DNA from: Mobula birostris | Taxonomy: Eukaryota | Reading direction: 5' to 3' | DNA: 64,000 bases | Assembly (NCBI RefSeq): GCF_030028105.1 | Contig: NC_092374.1 | Coordinates: 186,156,638 to 186,220,637, forward strand | Shown: piece by piece, positions 4,617 to 58,850 of the stretch | Numbering within the stretch: position 1 is the stretch's first letter | How the letters are laid out: every line of letters starts with the position of its first letter | Translations under genes and position numbers: made by a program | Notes under the pieces: generated by a model | The model's input: the letters and a program-made list of their open reading frames with translations, nothing else | What the model was told of the DNA's origin: nothing | Database searches by the model: none

Positions 4617-5843
4617 TGCCGACCCCTTCTCCTTCTCCTTCTTGCAATTCCTCCATCTCCATCTCCGCCGCATCTGCTCTCAGGATGAGGCTTTTCATTC
4701 CAGGACAAGGGAGATGTCCTTCTTTTTTAAAGAAAAGGGCTTCCCTTCCTCCACCATCAACTCTGCTATCAAACGCATCTCCCCCATTTCACACACATCT
4801 GCTCTCACTCCATCCTCCCACCATCCCACTAGGAATAGGGTTCCCCTGGTCCTCACCTACCACCAGCCTCTGGGTCCAACATATTATTCTCTGTAACTTC
4901 CGCCACCTCCAGCAGGATCCCACCACTAAGCACATCTTTCCCTCCCCCCCCCCCCCGCTTTCCACAGGGATTGCTCCCTACGCGACTCCCTTGTCCATTC
5001 GTCGCCCCCATTCCTCCCTACTGATCTCCCTCCTGGCACTTATCCTTGTAAGCGGAAAAAGTGCTACACATGCCCTTACACTTCCTCCCTTACCACCATT
5101 CAGGGCCCCAGACAGTCCTTCCAGGTGAGGCAACACTTCACCTGTGAGTCGGCTGGGGTGATATACTGCGTCCGGTGCTCCCGATGTGGCCTTCTATATA
5201 TTGCCGAGACCTGACGCAGACTGGGAGACTGCTTGCTGAACACCTACGCTCTGTCCGCCAGAGAAAGCAGGATCTCCCAGTGGCCACACATTTTAATTCC
5301 ACATCCCATTCCCATTCTGACATGTCTATCCACGGCCTCCTCTACTGTAAAGATGAAGCCACACTCAGGTTGGAGGAACAACACCTTATATTCCGTCTGG
5401 GTAGCCTCCAACCTGATGGCATGAACATTGACTTCTCTAACTTCTGCTAATGCCCCACCTCCCCCTCGTACCCCATCCATTATTTATATACACACATTCT
5501 TTCTCTCACTCTCCTTTTTCTCCCTCTGTCCCTCTGACTATACCCCTTGCCCAAACTCTGGGTCCCCCCCCCCCTTGTCTTTCTCCCTGGGCCTCCTGTC
5601 CCATGATCCTCTCATATCCACTTTGCCGATCAACTGTCCAGCTCTTGGCTCCATTCCTCCTCCTCCTGTCTTCTCCTATCATTTTGGATCTCCCCCTCCC
5701 CCTCCCACTTTCAAATCTCTTACTAACTCTTCCTTCAGTTAGTCCTGACGAAGGGTCTCGGCCTGAAACGTCGACTGTACCTCTTCCTAGAGATGCTGCC
5801 TGGCCTGCTGCATTCACCAGCAACTTTGGTGTGTGTTGCCGAC
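4617..5843 (+). mobile_element. 5'-truncated Penelope-like element: RT C-terminus, GIY-YIG endonuclease and pseudo-LTR with hammerhead ribozyme
   Basis: LRRICSQDEAFHSR, RVPLVLTYH, CxxCP, VIYCVRCSRCGLLYIAET, VATHFNSTSH, LEEQHLIFRLGSLQPDGMNIDF*. 7-bp duplication tgccgac at 4617-4623 and 5837-5843. Confidence 0.9.
5741..5776 (+). ncRNA. Type I minimal hammerhead ribozyme with intact core
   Basis: agtc-CTGACGA-aggGTCTCGGcct-GAAAC-GTC-gact: stem I agtc/gact, stem II agg/cct, palindromic stem III ACGT. Predicted cleavage after C5772. Confidence 0.8.
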
Positions 5844-14982: not shown

Positions 14983-15209
14983 GTGTTGCGGTGGTGTAAG
15001 ACTTTGGTTCGGCCACAGTTGGAGCATTGTCTGCAGCTCTGGTCACCACATTGTGGGAAGGAAGTGGAGGCTTTGGGGAGGGTGCAGAGCACGTTCACAG
15101 ATTGGTTCATGGGTTAGAGCATTAGCGATAAGTACAGGTTGGATAATCGTGGATTGTTTCTTTAGAGCAATGTTGGGGGTTGGGTGGGGGGGAAGTTAGG
15201 TGCACAATA

Positions 15210-18705: not shown

Positions 18706-20740
18706 CTGTGGCTTCAGTAACTGCATCACACATAGACCAGTAATTGCTTGTAATGGTGACAGTGGAACAGTGAGCTTGACCCAGAGCTAGACAGTGAAAA
18801 TAAGCAGGAATAAGAAACTAGAGACCACAGTGTTCGAGACCTTTCCTTCCATGTATGGCTGCTTGTGTGTAAGGGTTTTGATTTTGGACACCGTGCATTG
18901 TGGGTTTGATAACTGATCAATGATAACTGCTTTTTGCATAGTAGGGGAATTAAGGGTTATGAGGAAAAGGCAAGGTAAGTGGAGAGGAGTCCATGAGCAG
19001 ATCAGCCATGATCTTATTGAGTGGTGGAGCAGGCTTGACAGGCCAGATGGCCGACTCCTGCTCCTATTCCTTACGTTCTTATCAATGTCAGTGCTTTCCT
19101 CATTAGGTTGTGGGCGATCTCAGCAGGAGGCAGAGGAGGGAAATGCCCCTCAAGCAGACTGGGTAAGTTAAGACATTTGTATTGAAATTGGTTTATTATT
19201 GCACCATGTACCAGGGTACAGTGAAAAGCCTCTCTTGCATACTGTTGATACTTTACGCAGTGCGTTGAGGAAGAACAATGTAAAACTATAGCAGAATGCA
19301 GAACAAAGTGTAACAACTACAGAGAAAGTGCAGAGCAGGTAAACGATAGGGGCGATAGGGTGCAAGATCATAACGAACTAGAGTGTGAGGCATACTCCAT
19401 CTTGTGGTACGAAAGATCTGTTCGAGATTCCATTAACAGTGAGATTGCTGTTTTTTTTTGAGCTTGGTGGCCCACGCTTTCAGCTTTTGTCTCTCCTGCC
19501 TGATGGTCAGGTGGGAGGGGTGGGAGAGCACGTCGGGGTGGGTGAGGTCTTTGATAATGCTGGTTGTTTTACTGAGGCAGAGGCTATTGAGGGGAGGCTG
19601 GTTTCCGTGACACACTGAGCTGTGTCTACAACTCTCTGCCACTTCTGTGGTCATGTGCAGAGCAGCTGCCGAACCAGGTAGGATGCTTCCTATAAGAATC
19701 GGCAAGAGTTGACTTTGTGGATGGGAAGTGAATTGCTTAAACTGCTTTTTTTTTGCAGTTTGGATTTGAAATTCCCAAACCTGCTGTTCTCCTGGCATTG
19801 CCGAACCCCTGGGAATAAGCAATTCCCTCTCCTCCCAGGATATCAGCTGTGGAGTCCCAGCACCCACGTTGACTGAGTTGACCCTGTGTTGAGATGGAGA
19901 GCTGTCAGTGTGAGGCTGAACTGACCACAGTGCCTGCTTGTATATTTAACACTGACCATAAAACACAAAACCGTACAGTGCACGAACAGGCCCTCTAGCT
20001 CACAATGTTGTGCTGAACTGACAGAGCTAATGTCACCATCCCTTCTGCCCGGACGTGCACCATATCCCTCCATTCTCTGCATTAAGAATCTCTTTAACAC
20101 CTCTGTCCTACTTTCCTTCTGTGACAGAGCATTTCAGGCACCCATCACTCTCTGTGTAACAAAATCTACCCCGCACATCTCTGTAAATAAATACCATTCT
20201 AGTGTTAGGCATTCTGACCCAGGAGAAAGATACTGGCTCACAGACAAGAGAAAATCTGCAGATGCTGGGGAATCCAAGCAACACACACAAAATGCTGGAG
20301 CAACTCAGCAGGCCAGGCAGCATCTATGGAAAAGAGTACGGTCGATGTTTCAGGCCGGGACCCTCCAGCAGGACTCCTGATGAAGGGTCTTAGCCTGAAA
20401 TGTCGACTATACTCTTTTCCAAAGATACTGGCTGGCCATTCTTTTTATACCTATCGTAAGGTTATATGAGAGGAGGACTCCTTTGGAGTCTGTGGAGATT
20501 CAGCATGACATCCAAACTTAGATAAACTTCTATAGATGTGTACTGGAAAGTATATTGACTGGAGCATGGCTTGATATGGAAACACCAATGCCCTTGAATG
20601 GAAAATCCTACTAAAGGTAGTGAATTTGGCCAGTATACTACAGGTAAAGCCCTCCCGACCATTGAACACACCTACATTCATCATCAGAGATCCCCACCAC
20701 CCAGGTCATGGTCTCTTCTTGCTGCTCCCATCATGTAGAG

Positions 20741-24300: not shown

Positions 24301-25395
24301 TCAAAATTTCACTCCTGACTGAAGGTTTCAACTTTTCAAAGGTTTCAAGGGTACATTTCATGTCAGAGAAATGTATACAATATACATCCTGAAATTCATT
24401 TACTTTGCAGACATCCATGAAAACCGAAGAGTGCCCCAAAGAATGAATGAAAGTTAAATGTTAGAAACCCAAAGCCTCCCCCCCCAGCTCCCCCCATCCA
24501 TACATAAGCTGCAGCAAAGCAACGACCCTCCTCCCCCAAAGGCAACAAAAGCATCGGCACCTCCACCGAGCACTCAAGCGTGCAGCAAAGCATCAATAAA
24601 ATACAGACTTGCAGTATCCCAAAGACTACTCGTTCACCCAGTAATTTGACATACCACAGGCTCTCTCTCTCCCTAATAAGGGAAAAAGAGGTGTCCCCAT
24701 ATTCACAGCGAGAGGGGAGACATAACAAACAACTCGCTGATTAACAATGTCAAAAGTCTGTTGGTGTTGCTTTTTCCGAGCTCTGTGCCCAAAGAACTCG
24801 GGGCTCTGAACACGCAGCCAGCAGCCAGCTCGCTGCTTACGATCTTCCGTTTCCCATGATACACCAGTTTCTGCAGCGACACCGACCTCGCGTCCTCTCG
24901 CCTCCAGAGCCACAAAATCCTGGAACCCTGAAGGTGCACTAGTTCTGTAGGCCCTGTCCTTGGCATATGGAATAGCAGCCAGTCGTGAGACCCCAAGAGT
25001 GGATCCCATTCCCACAAGGAACCGAAGTCAGAATCAGAATCAGGTTTATTATCACTGGCATGTGTCATGAAATTTGTTAACTTAGCAGCAGCAGTTCAAT
25101 GCAATACATAATCTAGAAGAAGAGGGAAATAAAATAAAATAATAATAATAATTATTATTATTATTATTTATTATTTACTTATTCCCGGTAACTCCAGTTC
25201 AGGGTCTTCAAAAGAACCTTGAAAGGGAAAAATAAAGATATTAAAGATAGACAATGAGCTGTTTCCAAGGATGCAAGCAAAGCAGTCACCGTTATCTGTC
25301 AACTTTAAAGTCAAAGTAAATATACAAACAAAGTAACACACATCAAAGTTGCTGGTGAACGCAGCAGGCCAGGCAGCATCTCTAGGAAGAGGTAC

Positions 25396-25430
25396 AGTCG
25401 ACGTTTCAGGCTGAGACCCTTCGTCAGGAT
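25396..25430 (-). ncRNA. Type I minimal hammerhead ribozyme: core intact, stem I shortened
   Basis: - strand reads tc-CTGACGA-agggtctcagcct-GAAAC-GTC-gactg. Confidence 0.7.
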
Positions 25431-26374
25431 GTGTGTTGCTTGAATTTCCAGCATCTGCAGAATTCCTGTTGTTTGCGATATAAACAAAGTACATGTGGTT
25501 TGGTTGGTTGGCATCCATCTCTCTCAAAGGACAATGGGTGATGACTATCATCATTACAAGCCTGGTTGGAAGGTATGGAGATCCTGAGATACCCAGTCAT
25601 CAAGATCCCCCTCTCAGCTTCACCCGTGTAGTCCAAAGGAAAGCTTATGAAGCAATACGTTTGGGACCAGATTGGCTGCAGGAGCTGCTGGAAGGATCTT
25701 CAGTGATGTCCAGCTGCCACAGGGCTCCACTCCAGATTTGCTGTCCGAGTTTACTCCCATAGCCTTCGTCTCTCCCAAGGTTGCCCACAAGGCAGTGGGG
25801 CTACCTACCCATAGCTGGGATCCACACACCGGTGCAGGGGCCAGACCTCCTCCCCGTCCTCTGTAGTTCAGCCTGAGTCCGAAAGGAGTTCAGTTTCTGT
25901 GTGTCGCCAGCGAGGAGGCACAGCATGAGGCTTGCTGTTGGAGAGGCAGGGAGAAACTTACACATGCAGCTCTCCTTTTCACAAGACTGCTAGTCAGTGG
26001 TGGAAACTGAAAGCGAGAGCGACAAGCACTATCCACTGCACTACCACACTAGATGCATCACAACAACCATTTTGACATCAAAATGCATATATGACACCAT
26101 ATATTACATTGAAAATAATTTTCTCACAGGCAATTACAGGAAAAATAAAAAAGTACAATGGAATTTATGAAAAACTATGTATAAGCAAAGACTGATAATC
26201 AGCCAATGTTTAAAAGATGACAGATCGCGCAAATAAAAATATCAAATAAATAAATAATATTGAGAACATCAGTCATAGTGTCCTTTGACGTGAGTCCATT
26301 GAAGAACAGGTTCAGAGATGAGGTCAGTGAAGTTATCCACACTGGTTCAGGAGCCTGATGGTTGTCAGGTAATA

Positions 26375-29799: not shown

Positions 29800-30545
29800 T
29801 GAACAACACACACAAAATGCTGGAGGAACTCAGTCCTTCCAGGCGAGGCAACACTTCACCAGCAGATTCGTTGGGTCGTCTATTGTAGCCGGTGCTCCCG
29901 AAGTGGCCTCCTCTACATTGGTGAGTCCTGATGTAGACTGGGGGACCCACTTTGTCGAGGACCTTCACTCCCTCTGCATAAAGCAGGATTTCCCTAATTC
30001 CAGTCCCTTTTCCCATTCTGACATGGCCTGTGCCATGATGGGTTCACTCTCTGTTTGGAGAAGCAAGTCCGCATATTCCAGCTGGGCAGCCTCCAACCAG
30101 ATAACATGGACACCAATTTCTCTAACCTGATAACTTTTCCCCGTCCCCTTCCCTCTTCCATCCTCCACTCAGGCTCCTTTCTCACCTCTCCTCACCTATC
30201 GTCTCCGACCTGTGCTCCTCCTCCTTCCCTTTCTCTACTCTCCTGTCCCATGAGATTGCGTCTTCTTCAGCCCGTTATGTTTTCTACCTATCACATCCCA
30301 CCTTCCCTCCCCCACCCACCTACCTTCCTGCTCACCGGCTTCACCTGCCACCTGCCAGCGTGTACACCTTGCCCTCTCCCCAGCTTCTCATTCCGGCTCC
30401 TTCCCTCTTCCTTTCCAGTCCTGATGAAGGGTTTCAGCCCTTGAATAAACACATTGGCTGTTTATTCATTTTCATAAATGCTGCCTGACTTGCTGCACTC
30501 TTCCAGTATTCTGTGTGTGTTGCTCTGGGTATCCAGCATCTGCAG
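29800..30545 (+). mobile_element. Penelope GIY-YIG and 3' fragment with truncated hammerhead
   Basis: RQHFT..VVYC..CSRSGLLYIGES, FQLGSLQPDNMDTNF*, then cagtcCTGATGAaggg. Confidence 0.8.
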
Positions 30546-30829
30546 AACCTCGTGTGTAGCATTCTCTCTGAATAAAATAAAGTAAAGAAAATTTGTCGGA
30601 AGATCCAGGGATCAGGAGATCTGGTTACATCTGGAAGGTGGAGGTGGAATGATCTGCTGCGGAGTGCGGGGGGCGGGAGGGGGTGGGTCCTTGCTAAATC
30701 CTCTGGAGGCCGAAAAATACAGACTGTCTTGGGAATAGAGGACTGTGTATGTGCATGGGTGGGAGGAAGGAAAGCGGCTTGTGTTTTCTATTGAAACTCA
30801 GCAGGCCAAGCAATATCTATGGAAAATCA

Positions 30830-32540: not shown

Positions 32541-33759
32541 AGAGTTGCCGCGAATAAACAATCGACGTTTCAGGCCGTGACCCTTCATCAAGACTGAGGA
32601 GGGGTCTTGGACCGAAATGACGACTGTTTACTCTTTTCCACAGATACTGTGGTCTGCTGAGTTCCTCCGAAATTTTGTGTGTATTATTTTGATTTCCAGT
32701 ATCTGTAGATTTTCTGGTTTGTTTTGCTATTGTTGTTTTGCTGCGTTTCTGCTGACCATGGGTGGTGCTGCAATGCATTGCGACACTTACGGGCTGGCCC
32801 CAGAACACCCTTGGGGAGTGTTGGTTGTTAAAGCAAACATGCATTTCACTGTATGTTTTGATGTACACGTGATAAATAAATCTAACTCTTGAATCTTGCA
32901 TCGTGCTGCTATCTGCTCCATCTAGTGGTTGAAGCGGGATCTGCAGGCTGGGGCGAAGCAGGAGCTGAGTGTGTCAGACAGAAATAGTCTAGGTGTCTGG
33001 TCTGGATTCTGAATCAGTCTAGAGTAGAGATAGCTCTTCTAATACGAGAGGGCATGAATTTAAAGAAAGAGGACGTTAAGAGGAATTTAAAGAAAGAGAA
33101 AGAGGACTTTCTCTTTACATTGGAAGTTGTGGGTGCATTGTCAAGGAGTACGTTGAGAGGCTTCAGATAGGTGCGTGGAAATGCAGAGAATGGGATATGA
33201 AGGCAGAAGGGATTAGTTTAATTGGTGTAGTTCAGCACAACATTGTGAGTCCAAAGGCCCGCTCTTGTGATATACTGTTCTATTATTGAATAAAGATTTT
33301 CAACCATCACAAAACAGCCTTTGTCTCACGACTCCGCACCTTTCCTCTCCTACTCGTCCCCATCAGCCCAGATTTCCCTTCTTCACCCGGTTCCGCCTCT
33401 CACCTACCCCACCCCTCCCTCTCACCTCTCTGTTCTGATGCAGGGTGTCAAACTGAAATGACCCCCCCACACCCCACATCCACAAATGCTGACTGTCTGG
33501 CAACTGCTTTTTGCCCTGAATCTTCAATAGTTCCAGCAGAGTGGAAGACAGTAAATTGCTTAAGCAAGGAGGGAGAATGAAAACGGGGGAGTGTAGACCA
33601 GTCAGCCAGTGATAGTGGAAATGCCAGGAGCTGCTACTATGGTTTTGTAATCAGATTGGACAGAGTGAGATGAAATTATGTTTGAGAACGATTTGGGATT
33701 ATAACAGGCAGAGTAGATATCGGCATAAATAAGATGTCCTTTTTCCCCAGCGCCAGGGA

Positions 33760-35440: not shown

Positions 35441-35596
35441 TGAGAGGGGAAAGACTTAAAAGGGAAGTAACACACACACAAAGTGCTGGCGGATCTCAGC
35501 AGGTCAGGCAGCATCTGTGGAGAGGAATAAGCAGCCGACGTTTCAGCACGAGACCCTTCATCATTTCCAGCATCTGCAGAATGTCTTGTATTTAAT

Positions 35597-35930: not shown

Positions 35931-37649
35931 TTTAAAAGAGGATCAGTTTCTCACAGAGGGTTGTGGCTATGAAGAACAATCTCCCAGGGGATGTGGTAAA
36001 GCTAGGATTAAAAGGCACTTGGACAGATAAGTGGAAAGGAAAGGGTTAGGGGGATTTGGGTCAAACATGGGCCAACGGAACCACCTCATGACAGGTAACG
36101 TACAAGTTGCGCCGAAGGGGCCCATTTCAATGCTGTATAACTGACTATGACCTGTACCGAGATTTTTGATGCACCCGGTGACACGTTAGGGAATAGCAAA
36201 CAACCTTAAAGTGGACTATATTGTTGGTGTTTACTACATGGATTAGGTTAACAGACAGGAAAAGAAAAGAGTTGATTAAGATGGTCACAGCTTCTTCCCC
36301 ACTGGAATCAGTCTCCTGAACCAATCACCTTCCCTCCCCAGTGGTACTACCACATTCACTCACTCACCTCTTGTTTACTCCTCTGCCCTCACCGGTATTT
36401 TTGCACTGCAATTTTGGTTGCATTTTTGCAATATTTCTTTATTATTGTTGTATTTATTATTTTTATATTATTACCATATATAATGTTTACTGTGTGATGA
36501 GCTTCACGTAAGAAAGGAATTTCACTTCACCCCAGTTTATATGACGATAAACTAATCTAAGCTAAGGTCATCATTATCATTACGTACTGTGCTGTATGAC
36601 GTGGGTGATCGTGGTCTTTCCATGACCATGATTGATCTTGGCAAATTTTTTGACACAAGAGGAAAAATTGCTTTCTTCTGAGCGGTGACTTTACAAGACA
36701 GGTGACCCCAGCCTTAATTGATACTCTTCAGAGCTTGTCTGTCTGGCGTCAGTGGTCGCATAACCAGGACTTGTGATCTGCACCATCGGCTTTCATGGCC
36801 TGCTCCCATGGCTTCACATGACCCTGATCCGGGGGTCGAGCAGGTGCTACACCCTGACCTACAGGTGAGTGGAGGGAAGGATTGCCTTACTCCGCCTCTG
36901 GTAGAGACATATCTCCACCCCACCTCCCTAAGTTAAATTAAAACCCACAAAGTGCTGGAGGAACTCAGCAGGTCAGGCAGCAGCTATGCTCAGGGATAGA
37001 GAGTCGAGATTTTGGGCCAAGACCCTTCAGGATGAAGGGTTAGAATTAGAAGCATCTCAGCCTGAAATATCGACTCTTTCTCCTTCTCCACAGACGCTGG
37101 CTGACCTTCAGCATTCCTCCGGCATTGTGTGCATTTACTCTGGATTTGCAGCTCCAGTTTTGTGTGTGTTGCTTTTCTGCAACAGTGCTGAGCTTCTGAA
37201 ACAAAATGCTTTATTCAGGCCTGTCACCTGGAATGCTGGGCAGCAATCTGAGTGAGAGCTCAAAGAGACTCGACTGACCCAACAAACTTCCAGCAATTGA
37301 GAGTATTCACATTACAACAGTTACGATGTGGACTCGACAATAACTCAACAGTAATCCACTTCTCTTTGCAGTATTCAACCTTTGTAATATCGCTGTCGGG
37401 GTTGCCTCTAATTGCCCGGCAAATAGCACTTAGCCTTCCTTTTCAGACACACATCAATGTTTCCATTCAAAGTTCAAAGCAAATTTATTATCAAAGTACA
37501 TAAATGTCACCTTACACTTCCCTGAGATTCATTCAATATTCAGAAGGACAGATCAGCAACTACGTCAACAGAACAAAACAAGATCAAACAGCAAAACAAG
37601 TCCCCCTTCCACACACCCCAGGAGAGGCCATCCCCGAGCCTCTAGTTCT

Positions 37650-39899: not shown

Positions 39900-40075
39900 A
39901 GAGAGACGTGGAGAGAGTTTACGTAGGTGTGTGAGGGTGAGAGGAATAAAGTGAGTGGGACAGAGTTAGAGGGAGAGAGGAAAAGTTATAGAGAGAATCT
40001 GAGAGTGAGAGGGAGAGATAGAGAGAGGAAATTATAGAGATGGAGAAATGTGGAAAGCGAGTTGAAGAGAGAACA
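39900..40075. repeat. GA-rich low-complexity tract
   Basis: Degenerate (GA)n sequence. Confidence 0.8.
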
Positions 40076-40321
40076 ATGTCTCAATATCGCCCCCAGGTGG
40101 ACACTCTCAGCGCTCCATTAGTCCCTTGGCATTCCATTGTAGGTTTCCGCAAATAAAACCCTTAACACCTATTATTGAACTCCAAAAACCTAAACACAAA
40201 AGCACGCTACAAATCTTTACGTAATAATGTCATCACGTCAGACCAGTCTCTAAAATGAACCCCCCAACTCATTGTCGGTGGTTGTGAATTATAAACACAA
40301 AATAATCTGCAGATGCTGGGG

Positions 40322-40361
40322 TCAGTCCTGACGAAGGGTTCCGGCCCGAAACGTCGACTGA
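40322..40361 (+). ncRNA. Type I minimal hammerhead ribozyme, best-preserved copy
   Basis: tcagtc-CTGACGA-aggg-ttccgg-ccc-GAAAC-GTC-gactga, with a 6-bp Watson-Crick stem I. Confidence 0.85.
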
Positions 40362-40799
40362 TCTTTTCCACCGATGCTGCCCGACCTGCTGAGTTCCTCC
40401 AGCGTGTCGGTTGTGAATTATAAACGTCCTCCCAGTTCTCTCTCTCTCAACTTGCACTACTGCTGTTATGTCTATTTTGTTGTTTATGTATAATTTATGT
40501 TAAATTTATTTTAAGTCATATTTGTCATGTCTGGAATGTAATATGCTCCTGTGCAGAAAGCTGATTCTTATGGTACGTGTATCCCCTGTGTACGGGTAAC
40601 CCTGACAGTAAACCAGCCGCAAACAACAGGAAATCTGCAGCTCTGGAAATCCGAACAACCCACACGAAGTGCTGGAGGAAATCAGCAGGCCAGGCAGTAT
40701 CTCTGGAAAAGAGTTTATCCACCAGCCTCACCCACTACCAGTTGCGTTGTTCCAAAATTAACACAAAGTTTAAAAGACAGTTTGTCTTTGAAAAAGCTA

Positions 40800-41490
40800 C
40801 AATGACTTGCATTTATTGTACCCCGCAATCACGATCTAGAATTAATTTATTCCAGTGTTATAATTTCTCAAAATTTGCCCTCCCCATTTCCTTCCTCTCG
40901 CCCGCTGACTGGGTTCATTTCGTTCTCCTTTGTGGACAGGGTTGTAAATACCCTCCTGGTGTAGGAGCCACGTATCCGTTTTTTGCCTTCTGTATTGTAT
41001 TAGGTGTTGAGTGTTTCCTTGGGGTAATTTTTCACGCGGGTTGGGGCGTGGTAGAAGCGAATGCGTGTAGTTACTTATTCACACTTTGTTTTAGTTTGTT
41101 GGATTAGTCTTGTTGAGTCAGAGGCAACCGGGGAATATTTTTAATTGACCACTGGGATCGCCAATTGGAACGCTTATTTCGTTACTTTTTATTTACGATT
41201 TTTGTTAAATCGCTAATTCAGTGTTGTTAGCATTTTATCACTAAAAGATTGTTCGTCTTTGCTGGTTTCGAAATAAACAATCGAACGTACTTTCCCCGAT
41301 TTGGAAGCGGGTCATACAGTGTCAATTCCCGTAATCCGCGGCTTGCGTTTGTTTTCAAGGAACCGCTGCACCAGCGTTTAAAGGGAAGGGCGCTTCCCCG
41401 TCCCTACGTCGTTCCTACAGCCTGGGAAGCATCACATCCAGACGGGGGATTGTTCTGTTCCTAGTCCTGTCACAGATCCGTGAAATTTAA
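40800..41490. promoter_or_regulatory. Second CpG-enriched non-repetitive island
   Basis: Locally high CpG density; no recognisable repeat. Confidence 0.35.
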
Positions 41491-46010: not shown

Positions 46011-49000
46011 TTACCCTCATAATTTTACTGTTGCTGAAGTCCTTTTCTAGCAGGATATTTTTCTAGCACAGGCAGATACAAAATGCTCACATTAAACCTC
46101 TGCCTTGCCAGAGCAGGGGTCCCTAAAGTAACCCTACATTGAGTTCAAAGTTGACTGGCAACTTCTGCAACGCCACTGGTGCCAAACCGTATCAGCCTCT
46201 GCTGTTCCTCTGGATTCATCAGCAGCGTGGAGAGGAGGAGCCTATGACATGGGCAACAGCTTGCCGTCCGTCTCATACTGCCCGAGCTTGTGTATCACGG
46301 AGGTAGCTGGCACAAACATCCATGGTCAACCTCGACCAGAGGAGAGGCTCAAAAGTTTACTTCACCTTATGTTTATCTTCATTTTGCAATGTATTGTGCT
46401 GCTGTTGGAAAAAGCTAAATTTCATTATACCCTGTATATGTAGGCCCATGACAATAGTAAACTTGAACATATCTCTCCTCTTTGGTTTCTAAGCAGCCCC
46501 ACCTTTCTTCTTGCTATACATTTACTATTTATGTGCCAAAAGAAGACTTTTGGATTCTATTTATGTTCGCAGTGAATCCACTCTCATGCTCTCTGTTTGA
46601 CTCTTTTATTTCCTTTTTCACTTCCTCTCTAATCTTTCAGCATACAGCATAGATCTTGTATTTTTCACTGTCAGACACTCACTTCATATGCACAATTTTA
46701 ACTGCTTTATCTGGTGCTTCTGGCTTCGGTCACGTGGACCTTTACTCCTTGTGAGAACATGCCTAGACTGCACCTGAACCATTTCCTCACAGGCAGAGTG
46801 GGACATTCACCCTTCATCAAGATTCTGGGGCTGGTTTACTCTCCTGTACTTTTTAATATCTTGTGATTTGTGTATCTTTGTTTTGAATGAAAACTACTCT
46901 ACAGTGCTCCAGAGTAGAAGATTCTGAAAATGTACCATCCTCTGAGTAAGAAACCAGGAGCCAGTCTAGTGAATCTTGACTGCACTCCTCTATGCCAAAT
47001 GAATTTATGTTTTGGATAAGGAAATCAAAACTGTACACTAAATTCTAGATGCAATCTCACCAAGGCACTATATAATCAATACTCAAATTCTCTTGCAATA
47101 AAGGTCAATATATTTGCCTTCATAACTGCTTGCTGCATCTGCGTGCTAACTTTGATTGATTTGTAGGCAAGTACATCCAAATCCATTGAACATTAAGATT
47201 TTCCATTAATTCACCTTTGAAAACTCTTTTGTTTATGAAGCTAAATGGATGGCCTCCCATTACTGTGCCCTATATTCTGGTTGCTTTGGCCTTGCTCTCT
47301 CACTTAGCTTGTATATGTCCACTCTTTCCCATAGATGCTGCCTGACCTGCTAATTCCTTCTGTGTTTTGTGTGTTGCTTGGATTTCCAGCATCTGCAGTC
47401 TTGTGCTTGTGATTTACTTCTGCTCACTGCCTGTTAATTAAATCTCAGTCCACACCAGTACATTAGACCCAGTTCCGTGTGCCCTGACCTTAAAGTCCAA
47501 CCTCCCTGGTAGGATCTTTTAAAAATCTAAGCAAGTCACATCCATTGGTATCTCTTATCCGTTGTATTAGTGAAGTTCTCAAATAACTCCGATAAATTAG
47601 TGAAATATGGTATTCCTCTCAGAAATCCATGCTGACTTTGTTCAAACTTATTATACTCTTCCAGTCGTTCCATTACTACATCCTTCATTATAGACTTCAC
47701 AGCACTTCCCTTACCACTGAGACTAAGCTAACAGTCAGTAGTTGGAGACACAATAGACTGTGGATGCTAGAATCCAGAGTAACCCATAAGATGCTGGAGG
47801 AGCAGCATCTGTGGAATAAAATGAGCAATCAATAGTTCCCTGTTTTTCTCTCCCTCCTTTTTTCAACAGTGGGGTCACATTTTCTGCCATCCCGTCTGCA
47901 GGGACCATTCCAGGATCTATGGAGTTCTGAAAAATTATGATCAATGTATGCACTGTCACTTTTGAAAATTCTGTGATGTACATCATTGGGTCCTTGTGAT
48001 TTATCAGTCTCACCAACCTCCCCAGTATAGTGCTTTTATTAATTTCCTTCAGTTATGTAATCTTCTTGGTTCTTTGGTATTTCTGGTGGATTTTCATGTT
48101 TGCTTCCATTATGGGACTTATAACGGAAATCTAGATAGGCACACAATGTGAGGAAAATAGAAGGAGATGGACATGGGGTAGGCAGAATATGTTAGTTTAG
48201 TTGGCATTTGATTGCTAACATAATTGGTTCAGCACAACATTGTGAGCCAAAGGGAATATCAAACGTGGGTTTTTTATACAGAGAGTGGTGAAATGTCCTG
48301 TCAAGGGTAGTGGTAGAGGCAGATACATTAGGGCTATCGAGGAAACTCTGAGATAGGCACATGGATGATGGAGAAATGGGGACAGGGGGCTATGTGTGAG
48401 GGAAGGTGCAGATTGATCTTCAAGTAGGTTAAAAGGTTGGCATAATCTCGTGGGTCGAGGGGCTTGTACTGTATTGTCGTGTTCTATGTTGTACGTAACT
48501 ATGTGGACATGTGGGATGGGGCATTAGTTTTGTTGAGGAACAGAAGATTCACACACACAAATCTGTTGTCAGGTCAAACAGAAATATATTATTTTGACCG
48601 ATATTTCAACTCAGGCAAACAAGGTCAATTCCGTACTGGTGTGATTCCCACATCCTTCCTCTGACAGTCAAAAGTCAATAGTGAAACAGGAAATAAATAT
48701 AACGGCAATTTCAACAAGCTGCAAACCAAGTTTAATATTCACAGTTATGTGCACACAGTAACAACAGTAATTCAATTGTGCGTTTGGATGTAGCATTTAA
48801 TAGACATAATCAAAGTCATCATTTTGACATATCATTAATTGGACATCATTTAGATGATCATCTGTAATAGAAATATTTTTAAAAGACACTGTAACATGGT
48901 GGTAGCTTTACAACATCAGGAATCACTAATGGGAGCTTGATCTTTGCCACTGTCTGTCAACAGTCTGTAGGTTTCTGCCAAGTGCTCTGGCTTCCTCTCA

Positions 49001-49571: not shown

Positions 49572-52500
49572 CTGAGATGAAATCAAATAAGCCTCATTAC
49601 AATTTGAACTCCCAATACGCCAAAGTGTTTCACAGGACAGTAAGGAAGGAATACAAAGCGATTGATGTGTGAAAACTTGCTTATTTATTTCATTTAGAGA
49701 CACAACGCAGGATGGTCCTTCTGGCCCAAAAAGCCTCATCACCCAGCAACCTAATCGCAGGACAATTCACATTGACCAATTAACTAGTTTGTCTTTGAAT
49801 GGTGGGAGGAAACCTGAGCACCCAGAGGAGCCGATGCAGTTCACAGGGAAAGCATACAAACTCCTTACAGGTGGCACCAAATTGAACTCCAAATTCTGGA
49901 ATGACCCAAGCTGTAATCACGTCGCGCTAACTGCTACGATGTGCTTAAAGAAATAGGTTTAGAAGCTTCTTAACGGAGGAAAATAGAACACCATGGCACA
50001 GCACAGACCATTCAGCTTACAATGTTGTGCTGAGGTAATTTAACCTTTCCCTCACATATATCCCTCCATTTTTCTCTCAGAAAGAGGTAGACAATTTTCG
50101 ACAGAAACCCAGAGTTTAGCCCTGGCCAGCAGAAGGGCAATTGTCAGTCCATTAAAATAGTGATTTCAGAAGGAGGCCGGGATTGGAAACCCCATAGCTG
50201 GAGAAGGTTGAAGAGTAAGGAGAGCAGAAGCAATCGATAAATCTGTAAACTGGATGGACTACTTAGCATTGACTGAGCCACCGATATCAGACATGATATA
50301 ACTGCTCTCCAACCGGTCAACCATGAACAGTCCTCCACTAAAATCTGGCACTGGGGTCTGAATTGGAAGAGCTGTCCCACTGCCTAGTCAGAGAACAGAA
50401 CACCCTGGCTGAGCCAACCTGACATTGTGCCACCACAGTCCCCACATATCCCGTGACCCACCAGAAGATGGCAGCAGATTACTGTACAGGTGGGTCCTCA
50501 AGTGTTGAATTGGGACCTACGAAGTCCCAGCGTATCAGCAAGAAAACCTAAACACGAGGAATTCTGCAGATGCTGGAAATTCAAGCAACACACATCAAAG
50601 TTGCTGGTGAACGCAGCAGGCGACGAAGGGTCTCGGCCCGAAACGTCGACTGTACCTCTTCCTAGAGATGCTGCCTGGCCTGCTGCATTCACCAGCAAAT
50701 TTGATGTGTGTTGCTTCAGCAAGAAAACCTTCCTGCTTGCCACCCGCTATCCTCCCTCAGCAGATAATTCAGCCTCCTCCTAGCTGGAAGAAACACCAAC
50801 ACTAGTAAGGACACCAGACGTATGCTTCCACATGGTCCTCTGGTACTGTGACCGTGGCCCTTTCAGTTTGCTCAGTTACAGTTTGTGATTCTGAATTGTC
50901 AAGTTTGCGGGACTTGCCAGGGAAGGTAGAGTGATACTACTCTCCCATGGTATGACGTCTGGAACCAGGTGTCAATCTTTTTCAAGAAATGTTGACTACT
51001 TATCACTTTCCATAGACGCTGCTTGACCTGATAAGTTCCGCCATTAAAGGATTGGCCATTCAATACTGAGTTAAGATTTCTTCAAAGTGTGGCAAAGTCT
51101 GGAAACTCTCCACCCAAAGGGGCCTTGACATTACATTTCGGTTAGAGATCGATAGATTTTTGAACATTAAGGGAATGGTGGCTATGGGTTTCACGCCTGA
51201 AAATGGCACTGATCAGCCGTGAATGTGAAGACTGACGATTTATTGACCCTGATGGGGTTCCCCTCCCGATAACTGAGCTGCTGCATGTTACTAACGTCCT
51301 TAGGCGAGGGCTGACAATTATATTTATTTATTTGTTTGTTTAGGGCAGAGATGAGGAGGAGCTGCTTTTCTCAGATAGTGGTGAATCTGTGGAATTCTCT
51401 GCCCAATGAAGCAGTGGGGGCTACCTCAGTAAATATATTTAGGACAAGGTTGGATAGATTTTTGCATAGTAGGGGAATTCAGGGTTATGGGGATAAGGCA
51501 GGTAGGTGGAGATGAGTCCATGGTCAGATCAGAAATGATCTTACTGAATGGCGGAGCAGGCTCAATGGGCCAGATGGCCTGCTCCTGCTCCTATTTCTTA
51601 CGTTCTTATGTATAATGTTTATTTATTTTATTTAGAAATACAACACAAAACAGGCCCTTCCAGTCCAACAAACTGCAGCTCCTAGCAACCCACCTATCAC
51701 AGGACAATTTACAATGACCAACTGACCTACTAACTGATATGTCTATGGAATGTGGGAGGAAATCAGAGGACCCAGAGGAAACCCACACAGTCATGGCTAG
51801 AGTGTACAAACTCCTTACAAGGGCCACTGGAATTGAATTCTGAACTCAGAAAAGCCTGAACGTACACACTCCTGAGAGAGGCCACCAGAATTGAACGCCA
51901 AACCCCCAAAAGTCCAAAATGATTAGCATTGTGCTAACTGCTACACTACAAGTATGTCCATGACTGAATGAGCAAAGCCTTTATCTCACCACCCACACCA
52001 TCATGGCTGCTTTAGATCAGTTCAAGGTTGCTAACCGTCTTGAGAACATGGAATACCTCTGCCAAGTTCACAGGCAGTAACTTTGCAGAGTGTTTTATGG
52101 GCTTTGTTATCCATACCTCCATACCTCCTCCTTCCCTTCTCCCACCCCCCCAGCGTGGTTGCAGATGCCCTCCCCGATACTCCGCAAAGACAAAGACAAA
52201 CGTGGGGAGTTGCACTCAGAAGCCATGGCATATACAGTTTAATGACAATGCAACGGCAGTGCCAGGAAATGTTGAGTAGAGGGATCTGGAAGTACACGTC
52301 CATAATTCCTTGAAAGTGGCATCACAGGTTGATAGGGTGTTGAAGGGAGATTCTGGCACATGGGCCTTCATAAATCGATGTCCTGGTATAGGGATATCAT
52401 GCTGAAATTGTATAAGATGTTGGCTAAGTCTAATTTGGAGTATTATGTGAAGTTTTAGTCACCATCCTACAGGAAAAGTATCAATGAGTGAAAGAGTGCA

Positions 52501-52949: not shown

Positions 52950-55230
52950 GATTAGGATAATGAGTGTGCAAATGTAAACCTGACTCAGTGACGGGGCAGG
53001 TACAGAGCAGAGTGAAGGTGGCTCAGTAAACACTCTGATGCTACAGATATCAGTGACCAAACATGTTGGAGGCCCCTTGCCGAAGACCTTAGGAGCAGAA
53101 TTCGGCCATTTGGCCCATCGAGTCTACTCTGCCATTTCACCATGGCTGATCCAATTTTCCTCTCAGCCCCAATCTCCTGCCTTCTTCATGCCCTCACCAA
53201 TCAAGAATCTATCAAATTCTGCCTTAGATATACATAAATACTTGGCCTCCACAGCTGCTTGTGGCAAAGAATTCCACAGATTCACTACTCTCTGGCTTAA
53301 GAAATTCCTCTTCATCTCCATTCCAAAAGGACGTCCCTCTATTCTGAGGCTGTGCCCTCTGGTCAGATTCTCCCACCAAAGGAATCTTCTTCTCCACATC
53401 CCCTCTATCATGCCCTTTCACCATTCATTAGATTTCAAGGAGGTCACCCCTCATTCTTCTGAGTTCTGGTGAATACAGGCCCAGAACCTTCAAATGCTCT
53501 TCATATGACAAGCCATTCAATCCTGCAATCATTTTCGAGAACCTCCTTTGAACCCTCTCCAGTTTCAGCACATCCTTTCAAAGATAAAGGGCGTTCTTGC
53601 TTTTATATTCTAGTCCTCGTGAAATGAATGCTAACATTGCATTTGCCTTCCTCACCAGAGACTCAATCTGAAAGTTAACCTTTATGGAATCCTGCATAAG
53701 GACTCCCAAATCTCTTTGTAATTGAGTATTTTATATTTTCTCTCATTTAGAAAATAGTCAACCCTTTCATTTCATCTACCAAAGTGCATGACCGTACACC
53801 TCCCAACACTGTATTCCATCTGCCATTTCTTTGCCCATTCTCCTTATCTGACTAAGTCCTTCTGTAGCCTCTCCACTTCCTCAAAACTACCTGCCCCTCC
53901 ACCTATTTTCATGTCATTTGCAAACTTTGCAGCAAAGCTATCAATTCAATCATCCAAATCATTGATATATAATGTAGAAAGAATTGGTCCCAACACAGCT
54001 CCTTGTGGTACACCACTAGTCACTGGTAGCCAGTCAGAAAAGACTCCCTTTATTCCCACTCTTTGCCTCCTACCAATCAGCCTCAGCTTTATCCATGTCT
54101 ATCCTACTTACTACTTCTTCAAAGAATTCCAGCAGATTTATCGGGCAAGATTTTCCTTGAGGAAACCATGCTGACTACGGCCGATTTTGTCACGTGTCTC
54201 CAAGTACCCTGAGACCTCATCCTTAATAATCAGCTCAACCACTTCCCAACCACTGAGGTCAGACTAACTGGCCTATTGTTTCCTTCCTTCTGCTTCTCTG
54301 CCTTCTTGAAGAGTGGAGTGATATTTGCAATGTTCCTATCTTCCGGAACCATTCCAGAATCTAGTGATTCTTGAAAGATCATTACTAATGCCTCCATGAT
54401 CTCTTCAGCCACCTCTTTCAGAACCCTGGGACGTACACCATATCTACTTTCAGACTTACCTACTTTCAGACCTTTCAGTTTCCCAAGAACCTCTCCCTAG
54501 TTATGGTAACCACACACTTGACGCCCCCCGACACTTGGAACTTCCATCTTACTGCTACTGTCTTCCACAGTGAAGACTGGTGCAAAGTGCTTATTCAATC
54601 CATCCACCATTTCCTTGTCCCCCATTTCTATCTCTTCAGCATTGTTTTCCAGCGATCTGATATCCACTCTCGTCTTTCTTTTACACTTTATATATCTGAA
54701 GAAATTTGTGACATCCTCTTTAATATTATTGGCTAGCTTACTTTTGTATTCCATCTTTATCTTCTTAATGACTTCTTAGTTGCATTCTGATTGTTTTTAA
54801 AAGCTTCCCAATCGTCTAACTTCCCACTAATCTTTACTCTATTATATGCCCTCTCTTTGGCTTTTATGTTGGCTTTGACTTCTCTTCTTAGCCATGGTTG
54901 TGTCATCTTTCCTTCAGAATACTTCTTTGTCTTTGGGATGTATATATCCTGTGCCTTCAAAATTACTTCCAGAAATTCCAGCCATTGCTGCTATGCCATC
55001 ATCCCTGCCAGTGTTCTTTTCCAATCAATTCTGGCCATCTCCTCTCTCATGCTACTATAATTCCCCTTATTCCACAGTAAATACTGATATATCTGCCTTT
55101 AGTTTCTCCCTCTCAAATTTCAGGGTGAATTCAATCATAGTATGATCGCTTTACCCTTAGGGTTCTTTTACATTAAGCTCTCTAATTGATTCTGGTTCAC
55201 TGCACAACACCCAATCCAGAATAGCAGACT
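52950..55230 (-). mobile_element. Long CR1 ORF2 fragment (endonuclease end to 3' tail, with deletions)
   Basis: PEDRNIANITPLFKK..NNRPVSLTSVVGK, YKSKLANNIKED, RGHSLRIEG..WNSLPQ. Confidence 0.85.
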
Positions 55231-56199: not shown

Positions 56200-56900
56200 T
56201 AGTCTAGCGTTGCCACTGTCTGATAGGCGCTCTGAAGTCTGGGACCCACCAGACTGCAGACCTCGGATTTGGATGAAGAATCGGCTGGGTGCAGTCAGTA
56301 GGTGAAGCAGCATCATTGGGGTTTGCGGTGGGTGAGATGCCGGCGTATTGTGGTAAAACCTTGCATCAGCACTGGAAGTGAAGTGGTGAGGTAACGAGTA
56401 TAGAGGAGAAGTGGAGGAGTGCAACAGGGGTCAGAGGTGACTGGTGGGGGGGGAATGGGAGTGGGTGAATGATAATGGGAATATTGAGATAGGTAGGGGA
56501 AGGGGGAGTCTGTGGATGCTGGAAATCTGGAGCAACACACAAAATACCGGAAGAACTCAGCTGGTCAGACATCATCATGGAGGGGAATAAACAGTTGATG
56601 TTTCGAGGCAAGATTGTTCATCAGGGCTGGAAAGGAAGGGGGGGGCAGAAGCCCAAATAAAGGGTGGGGGAGGGGTGGAACACAAACCAGCAGGTGATAG
56701 ATGAGACCGTGAGGGGAATAGTGGGTGGACGGGGTGTGGGGATGATGTAAGAAGGAGGGAGGTGATAGGTGGAAGAGGCAAAGGGCTTAAGAAGACAGTG
56801 GACAGTGGACCTTGGAATATGGTGAGGGAGGTGGGGAACCAGAGAGAGGTGTTGGGTAGACTATGAGTGTGGGGAAAGAGAAGGGGTGAGAGGGTAACCA
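56200..56900 (-). mobile_element. Penelope 3' or pseudo-LTR fragments
   Basis: Reverse-strand CT-rich tract followed by ccagccCTGATGA...GAAACatcaactg. Confidence 0.65.
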
Positions 56901-57089: not shown

Positions 57090-58850
57090 ATCATAAGTTA
57101 TAGCAGCAGAGTTAGGCCATTCAGCCCACCAAGTCTCCTCTGCCATTTCATCATGGCTGATTCACTATCCCTCTCAATCCCATTCTCCTGTCTTCTCATA
57201 ACCTTTGATGTCCTCGCTCATCAAGAAACTATCAATCCCTGATTTAAATACAAATTGGCCTCCACAGCCATCTTTGGCAATAAATTCCACAGATTATCCA
57301 CCCTTTGGCTGAAGAAATTCCTCCTCATCTCTGTTCTGAATTGATATCCTTCTAGCCTGAGGCTGTGCCCTCTGGTCCTAGGTTCACCCACTACCGGAAA
57401 CATCCTCCTCATAACCACTCTATCTGGGCCTTTCAATATTCAATAGGTTTCAATGAGATGCCATCACATTCTTCTAAACTCCAGATAAATACAGGCCTAG
57501 AGCCATCAAATGCTCCTCCTATGTTAACCCTTTCATTCCCAGAATCAATTTTGTGAACCTCCTCTGAATCCTTTCCGATGTTAACACATTTTTTCTCAGG
57601 TAAGGGGCCCAAAACTGCTCACAATATTCCAAGTGCAGTCTGGTCAATACTGTATGAAACATCAGCATGACCTATGTATTTGCTTTTATATCCTAGTCCT
57701 CTCAAAATTTCCTCATCACCAACTCAGCCTGGAAATTAACCTTTTGGGAATTCTGCACGAGGACTGCCAATTCTGATTTTTGAATTTTTCTCCCTGTTTA
57801 GAAAATAGACTATGCCTTTATTCCTTCTATGAAAGAAGCTTGACCGTACACTTCCCTACACTATAATCCATCTGCCGCTTCTTTGTCCATTCCTTCTGCA
57901 GATTCCCTACCTATCTTTGTTTTGATTACAAACTTGGCAACCAAGCCATCAATTCCATCATTCAAATCATTCACATATAATGTGAAAAAAGCGGTCCCAA
58001 TACCAAACCCTCTGGAACACCTCTAGTCACTGGCAGCTAACCGAAAAAAGGCACCCTTTATTTCCACTCCTTGCCTCTTGGAGTTAGTCAATGCTCGATC
58101 CATGCTAGTATCCATGTAATACCATGGGCTCTTATCTTGTTAAACAGCTTCATGTGCAGCTCCTTGTCAAAGTCCTTCTGAAAATAAAAGTAAACAGCTT
58201 CTACTGATACTCCACTGTCTATCCTGTCTGTTATTTCCTCAAAGAATTCCAACAGATTTGTCAGGAAAGATTTCCCCTTAAGGAAACCATGCTGACTTTG
58301 GCCTACTATATCATGTGTCTCAAGCATCGCGAAACCTTGTCCATCATTGATCGTGTGGATAGCCAGAGGCTTTTTCTCCAGGGCTGAAATGGCTAACACA
58401 AGGGGGCATAGTTTTAAGGTGCTTGGAAACAGGTACCACGGGAATGTCAGGGGTAAGTTTTTCAGACAGAGAGTAGTGGGTGCATGGAATGCACTACCAG
58501 CAATGGTGGTAGAGGCAGATACAATAGGGTCTTTTAAGAGACTCTTAGATGGGTACACGGAGCTTAGAAAACTAGAGGGCTATGTGGTAGGGAAATTCTA
58601 CGCAGTTTCTAGAGTAGGTTACATGGTCGGAACAACATTGTGGGCCAAAGGGCCTGTAATGTGCTGTAAATTTCTATGTTCTGTGTTATAAAGACGCCAA
58701 CATTTTCTCAAGCACTGAATTAGGCAAACTGGCAAAATACTTTTGAAGCGTCCACCATTTCTTTGCCTCCATTAGTACCTCTCGAACATCATTTTCTATA
58801 GTCTGATATCCACCCTTGCACCTCTTTTTCTTTTTCCATATCTGAAAAAG
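57090..58850 (-). mobile_element. CR1 fragment containing a nested, oppositely oriented CR1 3' end (about 58345-58685, +)
   Basis: GQSQHGFLKGKSFLTNLLEFFE on the - strand; NTRGHSFKVLG..WNALP on the + strand. Confidence 0.8.

What the first reader, a model, noticed from the sequence alone, without database searches (positions are those of the whole stretch)
40280..40425. A 112-bp insertion that is little more than an intact hammerhead ribozyme, flanked by a perfect 17-bp target-site duplication
Seen: ggttgtgaattataaac at 40280-40296 and 40409-40425 brackets a short reverse-complement tail, a complete type I hammerhead and about 45 nt of downstream pseudo-LTR. Established: Penelope-like elements carry minimal type I hammerheads with a palindromic stem III that are thought to work as dimers, and non-autonomous hammerhead retroelements (retrozymes) exist in other eukaryotes. 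Inference: this is a discrete retrotransposition product smaller than typical retrozymes. It suggests a ribozyme-centred mini-retroelement class in this lineage, mobilised by Penelope RT and GIY-YIG endonuclease.
Basis: partly seen in the sequence, partly recalled or inferred. Interest (0 to 1): 0.75.

Follow-up and report, generated by a model that had tools for sequence, protein, structure and literature searches.

The report
Short Penelope retrotransposon stub with hammerhead
This is a real 112-base insertion flanked by a 17-base duplication, but it is the shortest ordinary product of an abundant Penelope-like retrotransposon of this ray genome, carrying that element's usual minimal hammerhead ribozyme, and is not a new kind of ribozyme-based mobile element.

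Summary
An exact 17-bp repeat (40280-40296, 40409-40425) brackets a 112-bp insert. The insert holds a 23-nt inverted "tail", an intact minimal type I hammerhead (40320-40363, no helix III) and 45 nt of downstream sequence.

The hammerhead-plus-3' module occurs about 25 times in this 64-kb window. In longer copies it lies directly downstream of a decayed GIY-YIG endonuclease reading frame, so it is the 3' end of a Penelope-like element (PLE).

The insert has the published PLE insertion signature in miniature: two arms head-to-head, the optional tail on only one arm, and a variable TSD. That fits the finding that PLE protein cuts and extends both DNA strands from two adjacent start sites.

The same architecture occurs on a 745-bp copy that reaches into the endonuclease frame. 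Two short copies are about 97% identical to the module of a long copy. No tandem units exist.

The site is occupied in a second organism about 3.5% diverged; no empty allele was seen.

One detail is unexplained. In 7 of 9 head-to-head events the junction sits at the hammerhead's upstream edge.

This scan reached the same verdict earlier on other DNA of this genome (s1-145545, s1-145291, s1-145277).

The parts
40280..40296 (.). Left copy of the 17-bp target-site duplication. Its last 4 nt (AAAC) could also be the end of the inverted tail.
   Evidence: exact, only two occurrences in the window.
40297..40319 (-). Inverted 'tail': the reverse complement of the family's long-form 3' terminus (CCAGCATCTGCAGAT..TTGT). 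Read as a 23-nt cDNA primed from the top-strand nick at the distal start site.
   Evidence: One search aligns it with ten long-form ends in the window. joints 40324/40407 'opposite strands' occur in all four runs.
40320..40363 (+). Minimal type I hammerhead. It has helix I (8 bp), core CUGACGA, a bulged A, helix II (4 bp plus tetraloop), GAA, the palindrome ACGU in place of helix III, and C17 at 40355. The predicted cut lies between 40355 and 40356.
   Evidence: The features match the min-HHR description in PMC4209133.
40364..40408 (+). 45 nt of the module downstream of the ribozyme. It ends in the GT-rich run where short-form copies end (the proximal start zone).
40409..40425 (.). Right copy of the 17-bp target-site duplication.
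   Evidence: The right junction lies inside contigs of organism A (exact) and organism C (records 7 and 31).
4690..5841 (+). Comparator: a long 5'-truncated copy of the same family. It holds a decayed PLE reading frame with the GIY-YIG endonuclease (frameshift and stops), a C-rich 3' UTR, an intact hammerhead at 5745-5772 and a short-form end. The 5' limit is approximate.
29802..30546 (+). Comparator: the same head-to-head architecture on a long copy. A short-form inverted arm (29802-29853) abuts a direct arm that starts inside the endonuclease frame and ends with the tail.
50550..50715 (+). Comparator: a 166-bp short copy with a 15-bp TSD (50535-50549 and 50716-50730). A 73-nt inverted long-form arm is joined to a direct short-form arm that starts 2 nt inside the hammerhead core.
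25336..25481 (-). Comparator: a 146-bp short copy with a 10-bp TSD, a 44-nt inverted tail arm, and an intact hammerhead with a short-form end.
35469..35591 (-). Comparator: an older short copy with a 27-nt inverted tail joined at the hammerhead edge. Its TSD has decayed.

Best explanation
The insert is a single, extremely short integration product of a Penelope-like retrotransposon (PLE) of this ray genome. It is a by-product, not an element in its own right.

Inferred mechanism: the PLE endonuclease made staggered nicks 17 bp apart. Both free 3' ends primed reverse transcription on element RNA. The top-strand end started at the distal start site and copied only 23 nt, giving the inverted tail. 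The bottom-strand end started about 35 nt upstream in the GT-rich run and copied 89 nt, through the hammerhead to its upstream edge. The two cDNA ends were joined at a 2-nt overlap (GG/CC), and gap repair produced the TSD.

The hammerhead is simply the part of the element's terminal repeat nearest the start sites, so any copy longer than about 90 nt carries it. As a lone motif without helix III it is not expected to cut itself.
For: Shown:
- The TSD and insert anatomy are as described.
- The module recurs 32 times in 64 kb.
- Longer copies continue upstream into a C-rich UTR and a GIY-YIG endonuclease frame. The frame matches fragments that carry PF01541 at E=6e-19.
- Copies end at two discrete sites about 35 nt apart, a short form and a long form with the tail.
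- In all 6 head-to-head pairs where both arms end at a canonical site, one arm is short-form and the other long-form. Chance is 0.016 if the arms were independent.
- The same architecture occurs on a 745-bp copy.
- Short copies 25429 and 50622 are about 97% identical to the module of long copy 5742.

From the literature:
- PLE protein cleaves and extends both strands and starts reverse transcription at two adjacent internal sites whose interval is the 'tail'. Ribozyme mutants do not change insertion (PMC11167929).
- Head-to-head inverted terminal repeats, with the tail on one arm and a TSD, are typical of PLEs (PMC3846280, PMC8557442).
- Most min-HHRs are solo and are ascribed to truncated PLEs (PMC4209133).
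Against: - The direct arms do not stop at random. In 7 of 9 head-to-head events the junction lies within about 8 nt of the hammerhead's upstream edge. Plain random 5' truncation does not predict this.
- No reverse-transcriptase domain or full-length PLE lies in this window.
- The two-primer model is inferred from anatomy and from work on a lizard PLE. It was not tested on this element.
- Two palindromic hammerhead-to-hammerhead copies (20255-20437, 32552-32709) fit snap-back self-priming better than double priming.
Confidence: 0.75

Rival explanations
1. One reading: a distinct, self-propagating class of hammerhead-headed mini-retroelements of about 100-180 bp. It would have its own short template RNA that starts at the ribozyme and would be mobilised in trans by PLE proteins.
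For: Starts of short copies cluster at the hammerhead's upstream edge (7 of 9 junctions). At least four TSD-flanked short copies of 112-181 bp lie in one window. Earlier notes report more elsewhere in this genome.
Against: Short copies carry nothing upstream that could act as a promoter. They share a subfamily with a long copy. The architecture is shared with a 745-bp copy. Cores decay freely. There are no tandem units. The clustering is equally explained by a fixed 5' end of the parent element's own RNA.
Confidence: 0.12
2. A solo monomer of a non-LTR retrozyme. The unit would be cut out of a tandem transcript by the hammerhead, circularised, reverse-transcribed and inserted.
For: Retrozymes with type I hammerheads exist in vertebrates, including a cartilaginous fish, and solo monomers are common (10.64898/2026.07.22.740005, PMC7229834).
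Against: The insert does not begin or end at the cleavage site (40355/40356). Its two parts are inverted, not permuted or tandem. No tandem array of the module is in the window. The 3' ends coincide with the PLE-type two-site pattern.
Confidence: 0.04
3. Not one event: two nested or adjacent insertions, or capture of stray cDNA fragments during double-strand-break repair, with the 17-bp repeat arising from repair.
For: Junction microhomologies (GG/CC in the middle, AAAC at the left end) are also typical of end joining.
Against: One TSD encloses both arms. The same arm pairing, short-form plus long-form, recurs in 6 of 6 pairs. Both outer ends sit at the family's canonical ends.
Confidence: 0.05

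Closest known systems
Canonical endonuclease-bearing Penelope-like elements (Penelope/Poseidon/Neptune type): insertion units with head-to-head inverted pseudo-LTRs, an optional 30-40-bp 'tail' and a TSD (PMC3846280, PMC8557442, PMC11167929)
   Same: A minimal hammerhead in the terminal repeat. A GIY-YIG frame upstream in longer copies. Two discrete 3' ends separated by the tail, with the tail on one arm only. Head-to-head arms, heavy 5' truncation and TSDs of variable length (10-17 bp here).
   Different: The unit here is extremely small: arms of 23 and 89 nt, no coding sequence and no direct partial tandem. In this lineage the head-to-head junction sits right at the ribozyme's upstream edge. 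In Schistosoma, opposite-strand hammerheads were reported 100-700 bp apart (PMC4209133).
Minimal hammerheads (min-HHR) of metazoan PLEs (Cervera and de la Pena 2014, PMC4209133)
   Same: Type I topology. A full catalytic core. [quoted passage not shown] A G10.1-C11.1 pair. A palindromic 15.1-16.1 stretch (ACGU) with no loop, implying action as a dimer.
   Different: Helix II is short (4 bp plus a tetraloop), against 6-8 bp in the Schistosoma families. Helix I is 8 bp in this copy, partly by accident of the junction; it is 5 bp in the family.
Animal non-LTR retrozymes (PMC7229834; preprint 10.64898/2026.07.22.740005)
   Same: Non-coding, carries a type I hammerhead, presumably depends on PLE proteins, and occurs as solo monomers with TSDs longer than 4 bp.
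   Different: Retrozymes are head-to-tail tandem units (about 170-400 nt of RNA) with a ribozyme in every unit, and they give circular RNAs. This insert is a single unit with an inverted arm, does not end at the cleavage site, and has no tandem relatives in the window.
L1 'twin priming' 5' inversions
   Same: Both nicked target strands prime cDNA synthesis, giving an insertion whose 5' part is inverted relative to its 3' part and is flanked by one TSD.
   Different: In L1 the second primer anneals internally by chance homology. Here the two starts are the element's own two specific start sites.

Membership tests
Penelope-like element (insertion product) | Family copies encode the PLE protein (reverse transcriptase plus C-terminal GIY-YIG endonuclease) upstream of the terminal repeat | tested here: met
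   The endonuclease part is met. Long copies 5742, 30418 and 14139 read through the GIY...YIG, R, H, E and N motifs and a preceding C-x-x-C cluster. The piece 5148-5447 matches fragments carrying PF01541 and has an Atlas lead to GIY-YIG. Pfam gave no direct hit on the decayed pieces. No reverse-transcriptase domain was seen in the window.
Penelope-like element (insertion product) | Optional 30-40-bp 'tail' present at the end of only one of two inverted arms | tested here: met
   The inverted 23-nt tail lies at 40297-40319, and the other arm ends at the short-form site. The same asymmetry holds in 6 of 6 canonical pairs.
Penelope-like element (insertion product) | Target-site duplication of variable length flanking the whole unit | tested here: met
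   17 bp here. Other short copies in the window have 15, about 10 and 13 bp.
Penelope-like element (insertion product) | Direct partial tandem forming pseudo-LTRs around a reading frame | tested here: not met
   This copy has no reading frame and no direct repeat of the module. It corresponds to a solo terminal piece, not to a full PLE unit.
PLE-type minimal hammerhead (min-HHR) | Conserved core C3-A9, G12-A14, A15.1-U16.1 and H17, with an open helix I | tested here: met
   Read directly at 40328-40355. The predicted fold keeps helices I and II.
PLE-type minimal hammerhead (min-HHR) | Extra nucleotide between 9 and 10.1, a G10.1-C11.1 pair, and palindromic 15.2-16.2 with little or no helix III | tested here: met
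   A at 40335, G40336-C40347, and ACGT at 40351-54. A double-hammerhead pairing of two copies can be drawn at -30.5 kcal/mol, but it is less stable than other predicted folds.
PLE-type minimal hammerhead (min-HHR) | Self-cleavage, as a dimer or with protein help | not testable with these tools
   This needs in vitro transcription of monomer and dimer constructs.
Rfam hammerhead families (type I, II, III, HH9, HH10) | Match to a curated covariance model | tested here: not met
   There are no matches at the gathering score in the whole window or at E<=10 in 40150-40800. Those models expect a helix III.
Non-LTR retrozyme | Head-to-tail tandem units, each with a type I hammerhead | tested here: not met
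   TRF finds one unrelated 50-bp array only. The module hits show no clean head-to-tail repeats.
Non-LTR retrozyme | Expressed as unit-length linear and circular RNA | not testable with these tools
   No RNA run holds the stretch, and the single reads call went on DNA contigs.

The most novel reading that the evidence does not exclude
The pile-up of junctions at the hammerhead's upstream edge, together with the strict short-plus-long pairing of arms, may mean that the ribozyme region has a structural role in integration. One option is that it marks the fixed 5' end of the template RNA: the conserved pyrimidine tract plus CCAGTCC just upstream looks like an initiator or a 3' splice site. In that case, internal initiation on the 5'-proximal terminal repeat would routinely yield 'solo' stubs. 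The other option is that the dimer-forming minimal hammerhead holds two template RNAs together, so that the two cDNAs of one event meet head-to-head at the ribozyme.
Probability: 0.2. Interest if true: 0.55.

Novelty: new member of a known kind. Interest (0 to 1): 0.27.

Why it matters
By itself this is one more decaying copy of a very common repeat. Its value is as a clean natural example of how Penelope-like elements integrate. It has intact ends, a perfect TSD, and two arms that start at the two start sites seen in vitro for a lizard element. Many such stubs in one genome could be used to read the integration mechanism from sequence alone. They could also address why copying so often ends at the ribozyme's edge, and so what the still-unexplained PLE hammerhead is for.

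Tried and rejected
- Rfam scans at the gathering score and at E<=10 found no hammerhead. This is uninformative for a motif that lacks helix III.
- Pfam on ten long ORFs found only an immunoglobulin V-set domain. The 1-kb repeats near several copies are therefore receptor-gene paralogues, not PLE coding sequence.
- Pfam on the decayed endonuclease pieces found nothing.
- Empty-site search. All available runs are Logan contigs broken at the repeat. No joint skipping 129 bp was listed, organism D was uninformative and organism B had too little data. No paralogous empty site lies in the window.
- A possible tandem pair at 56626/56372 proved to be one good copy plus a degenerate remnant with no repeated unit.
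- Hammerhead cleavage as the source of copy ends is rejected. Only two truncated copies (40716-, 47317+) start near the cleavage site, and none end there.
- An ATG inside the core as the ORF start, as in the lizard element, is rejected. The copies with an intact core, including the young subfamily, have ACG there, and the ATG of the more decayed copies looks like CpG decay.
- I built only a profile of the 120-nt non-coding module, to locate copies.

Full report
**1. Observation**

GGTTGTGAATTATAAAC stands at 40280-40296 and again at 40409-40425, and nowhere else in the window even with two mismatches. Shuffles give 0.01 matches. A rough expectation for any exact 17-mer repeated within 200 bp in 64 kb is 7e-4.

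The 112 bp between the repeats (40297-40408) break down as follows:
- A 23-nt stretch (40297-40319) that is the reverse complement of the family's long 3' terminus.
- Helix I: GGTCAGTC at 40320-40327, paired with GACTGATC at 40356-40363.
- The core CTGACGA at 40328-40334, then an extra A at 40335.
- Helix II: GGGT, loop TCCG, GCCC, at 40336-40347.
- GAA at 40348-40350.
- The palindrome ACGT (40351-40354) where helix III should be.
- C17 at 40355.
- 45 nt that end in a GT-rich run.

Every conserved hammerhead position is present. The predicted fold keeps helices I and II (-22.1 kcal/mol, z = -2.5). It also pairs part of the core with the helix III region, which would be an inactive form.

A two-copy "double hammerhead" can be drawn at -30.5 kcal/mol, but it is less stable than other predicted dimers. 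Rfam finds nothing, even at E<=10; its models need a helix III.

**2. What the module is**

Earlier notes of this scan place the window in a manta ray. A profile built from the copies finds 32 matches in the 64 kb, roughly 25 insertion events.

Four copies share several hundred bases of upstream sequence: 5742+, 30418+, 14139+ and 56626-. Three more have the same C-rich upstream look.

In 5742, 30418 and 14139 that upstream sequence translates, with frameshifts and stops, into the C-terminal part of a GIY-YIG endonuclease preceded by a cysteine cluster. Pfam does not score the decayed pieces. The piece 5148-5447 matches short predicted proteins, two of which carry PF01541 (E = 6e-19), and the protein atlas points the same way.

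The hammerhead module is therefore the 3' end of a Penelope-like element (PLE). The order is endonuclease frame, about 330 nt of C-rich untranslated sequence, the hammerhead, then 70 to 105 nt. No reverse-transcriptase domain lies in this window. The 1-kb repeats near some copies are immunoglobulin-type receptor paralogues.

**3. Two 3' ends and the tail**

Copies end at one of two places. The short form ends in the GT-rich run. The long form runs about 35 nt further, through CCAGCATCTGCAG, to a terminal TGTTT.

This matches the published "tail", a 30-40-bp optional extension (PMC8557442, PMC3846280). In vitro, a lizard PLE protein starts reverse transcription at two adjacent internal sites whose interval is the tail, and it cleaves and extends both DNA strands (PMC11167929).

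In the insert under study the tail is on the left and inverted, and the right arm ends in the short form.

**4. The same architecture elsewhere in the window**

Nine events have two arms head-to-head. In all six where both arms end at a canonical site, one arm is short-form and the other long-form:

| Event | Short-form arm | Long-form arm |
|---|---|---|
| 25336-25481 | direct | inverted (44 nt) |
| 29802-30546 | inverted | direct (745 bp) |
| 35469-35591 | direct | inverted (27 nt) |
| 36937-37153 | minus-strand arm | plus-strand arm |
| 40297-40408 | direct (89 nt) | inverted (23 nt) |
| 50550-50715 | direct | inverted (73 nt) |

Single copies split about 5 short to 4 long, so six mixed pairs out of six has a chance of 0.016. 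The arms of a pair were therefore made together.

TSDs are 17, 15, about 10 and 13 bp. One of these events, 29802-30546, has a direct arm of 745 bp that starts inside the endonuclease frame. The architecture is thus not special to ribozyme-sized copies.

Two TSD-flanked short copies (25429-, 50622+) are about 97% identical to the module of the long copy 5742, so short and long copies come from the same source. Only three copies in the window keep an intact core. There is no tandem arrangement.

**5. Most likely mechanism (inferred)**

- The endonuclease made staggered nicks 17 bp apart.
- The top-strand end, whose last bases AAAC can pair with the RNA's terminal GUUU, primed at the distal start site and copied 23 nt.
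- The bottom-strand end primed in the GT-rich run and copied 89 nt.
- If both primers sat on one RNA, the distal cDNA would soon run into the proximal priming complex. That would explain why the inverted arm is so often just the tail: 23, 27 and 44 nt in three copies.
- The two cDNA ends were joined at a GG/CC overlap, and repair filled in the TSD.

Two palindromic hammerhead-to-hammerhead copies (20255-20437, 32552-32709) have inverted arms that end inside the module. They fit snap-back self-priming better, a possibility already discussed for PLEs (PMC3846280).

A lone copy of this ribozyme should not cleave. Single min-HHRs showed no activity in vitro (PMC4209133), and the lizard PLE hammerhead needed protein and was dispensable for insertion (PMC11167929).

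**6. What remains odd**

In 7 of 9 head-to-head events the junction lies within about 8 nt of the hammerhead's upstream edge. The exceptions are at about -590 and +63 relative to the core. For junctions spread evenly over the module this has a chance of 7e-5.

Plain random 5' truncation does not predict that. In the long copies a conserved pyrimidine tract followed by CAG (CCAGTCC) sits exactly there. It resembles a 3' splice site and also an initiator.

In Drosophila virilis Penelope an intron ends at the 5' edge of helix I (PMC4209133), and transcription starts 46 bp upstream of that intron (PMC2377424). I cannot decide among three options: a fixed 5' end of the template RNA, a preferred template switch at the ribozyme, or a role of hammerhead dimerisation. 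An earlier follow-up in this scan noted the same clustering (s1-145545).

**7. Age and empty site**

Only Logan contigs were available.
- In organism A, probably the source of the window, a contig covers 40380-40696 without a difference.
- In organism C, whose flanks differ by about 3.5%, a contig covers 40378-40714. That is 31 nt of the insert, the right TSD and the flank.
- The site is therefore occupied in both, and the insertion predates their split.
- No joint skipping the 129 bp was listed in any run. Organism D was uninformative and organism B had too little data.
- At about 1.75% change per lineage, 0.6 changes are expected in the 34 TSD positions, so a perfect TSD is unremarkable.
- Contigs from other copies that align from 40325 onward carry loose upstream ends reading ...CTCTTCTTTCAGTT. 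This is the long-copy type of upstream sequence (table 7).

**8. Comparison and novelty**

The insert passes the tests for a PLE insertion product: endonuclease in the family, tail on one arm, head-to-head arms, and a TSD. It also passes the tests for a PLE-type minimal hammerhead.

It fails the defining test for a non-LTR retrozyme, which is tandem units each with a ribozyme. It is also not a full PLE unit, since it has no reading frame and no direct pseudo-LTRs.

Solo min-HHRs ascribed to truncated PLEs were described in 2014 (PMC4209133). Animal retrozymes have since been argued to be non-autonomous PLE derivatives, with units as short as 51 bp and many solo monomers (10.64898/2026.07.22.740005; PMC7229834).

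This scan has already followed up the same kind of insert on other DNA of this genome with the same verdict (s1-145545, s1-145291, s1-145277). My analysis was done independently on this window and agrees.

**Verdict:** a real and cleanly preserved, but ordinary, member of a known kind. Interest is low to moderate, carried by the unexplained stop at the ribozyme edge.

**Limits**
- The sample is one 64-kb window.
- No RNA data could be laid.

Noticed in passing
window 5700-5744, 30375-30420, 56627-56670 (-), 14100-14140: A conserved pyrimidine tract plus CAG (CCAGTCC) lies directly upstream of helix I in all long copies. It looks like a 3' splice site and also fits an initiator consensus. In D. 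virilis Penelope an intron ends at this same position relative to the hammerhead.
   Followed up: partly
window 25336-25481, 29802-30546, 35469-35591, 36937-37153, 40297-40408, 50550-50715: In every head-to-head pair with canonical ends, one arm is short-form and the other carries the tail (6 of 6, chance 0.016). This is a sequence-level echo of the two start sites seen in vitro.
   Followed up: yes
window 20255-20437 and 32552-32709: These are palindromic hammerhead-to-hammerhead copies whose inverted arm ends inside the module, which looks like snap-back. In 20255-20437 the arms differ mostly at CpG sites, and a 13-bp repeat (AAAGATACTGGCT) may be a TSD or part of the arm.
   Followed up: partly
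window 40140-40271: A different high-copy repeat lies immediately left of the target site. Its summed contig depth is several hundred times that of the unique flanks in three organisms. It was not identified.
   Followed up: no
window 40634-40716 (-) and 47317-47398 (+): Two 5'-truncated long-form copies start within a few nt of the predicted hammerhead cleavage site. They are the only candidates in the window for templates that had been cut by the ribozyme.
   Followed up: partly
window 56284-56372 (-): A degenerate second hammerhead remnant lies 254 nt downstream of the 56626 copy on the same strand. It may be a relic of a partial tandem, but no repeated unit is detectable.
   Followed up: partly
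window 8468-9544, 12663-13082, 53090-54069, 57092-58105: These are roughly 1-kb repeats at about 67% identity. One ORF, 12235-12672, is an immunoglobulin V-set domain. They are paralogous receptor-gene segments rather than transposon sequence.
   Followed up: partly
window 14833-14986: A 50-bp tandem repeat of 3.1 copies at 91% identity. It is the only tandem array TRF reports in the window.
   Followed up: no
window 39900-40075: A purine-rich GA/GAGAG low-complexity tract lies upstream of the locus.
   Followed up: no
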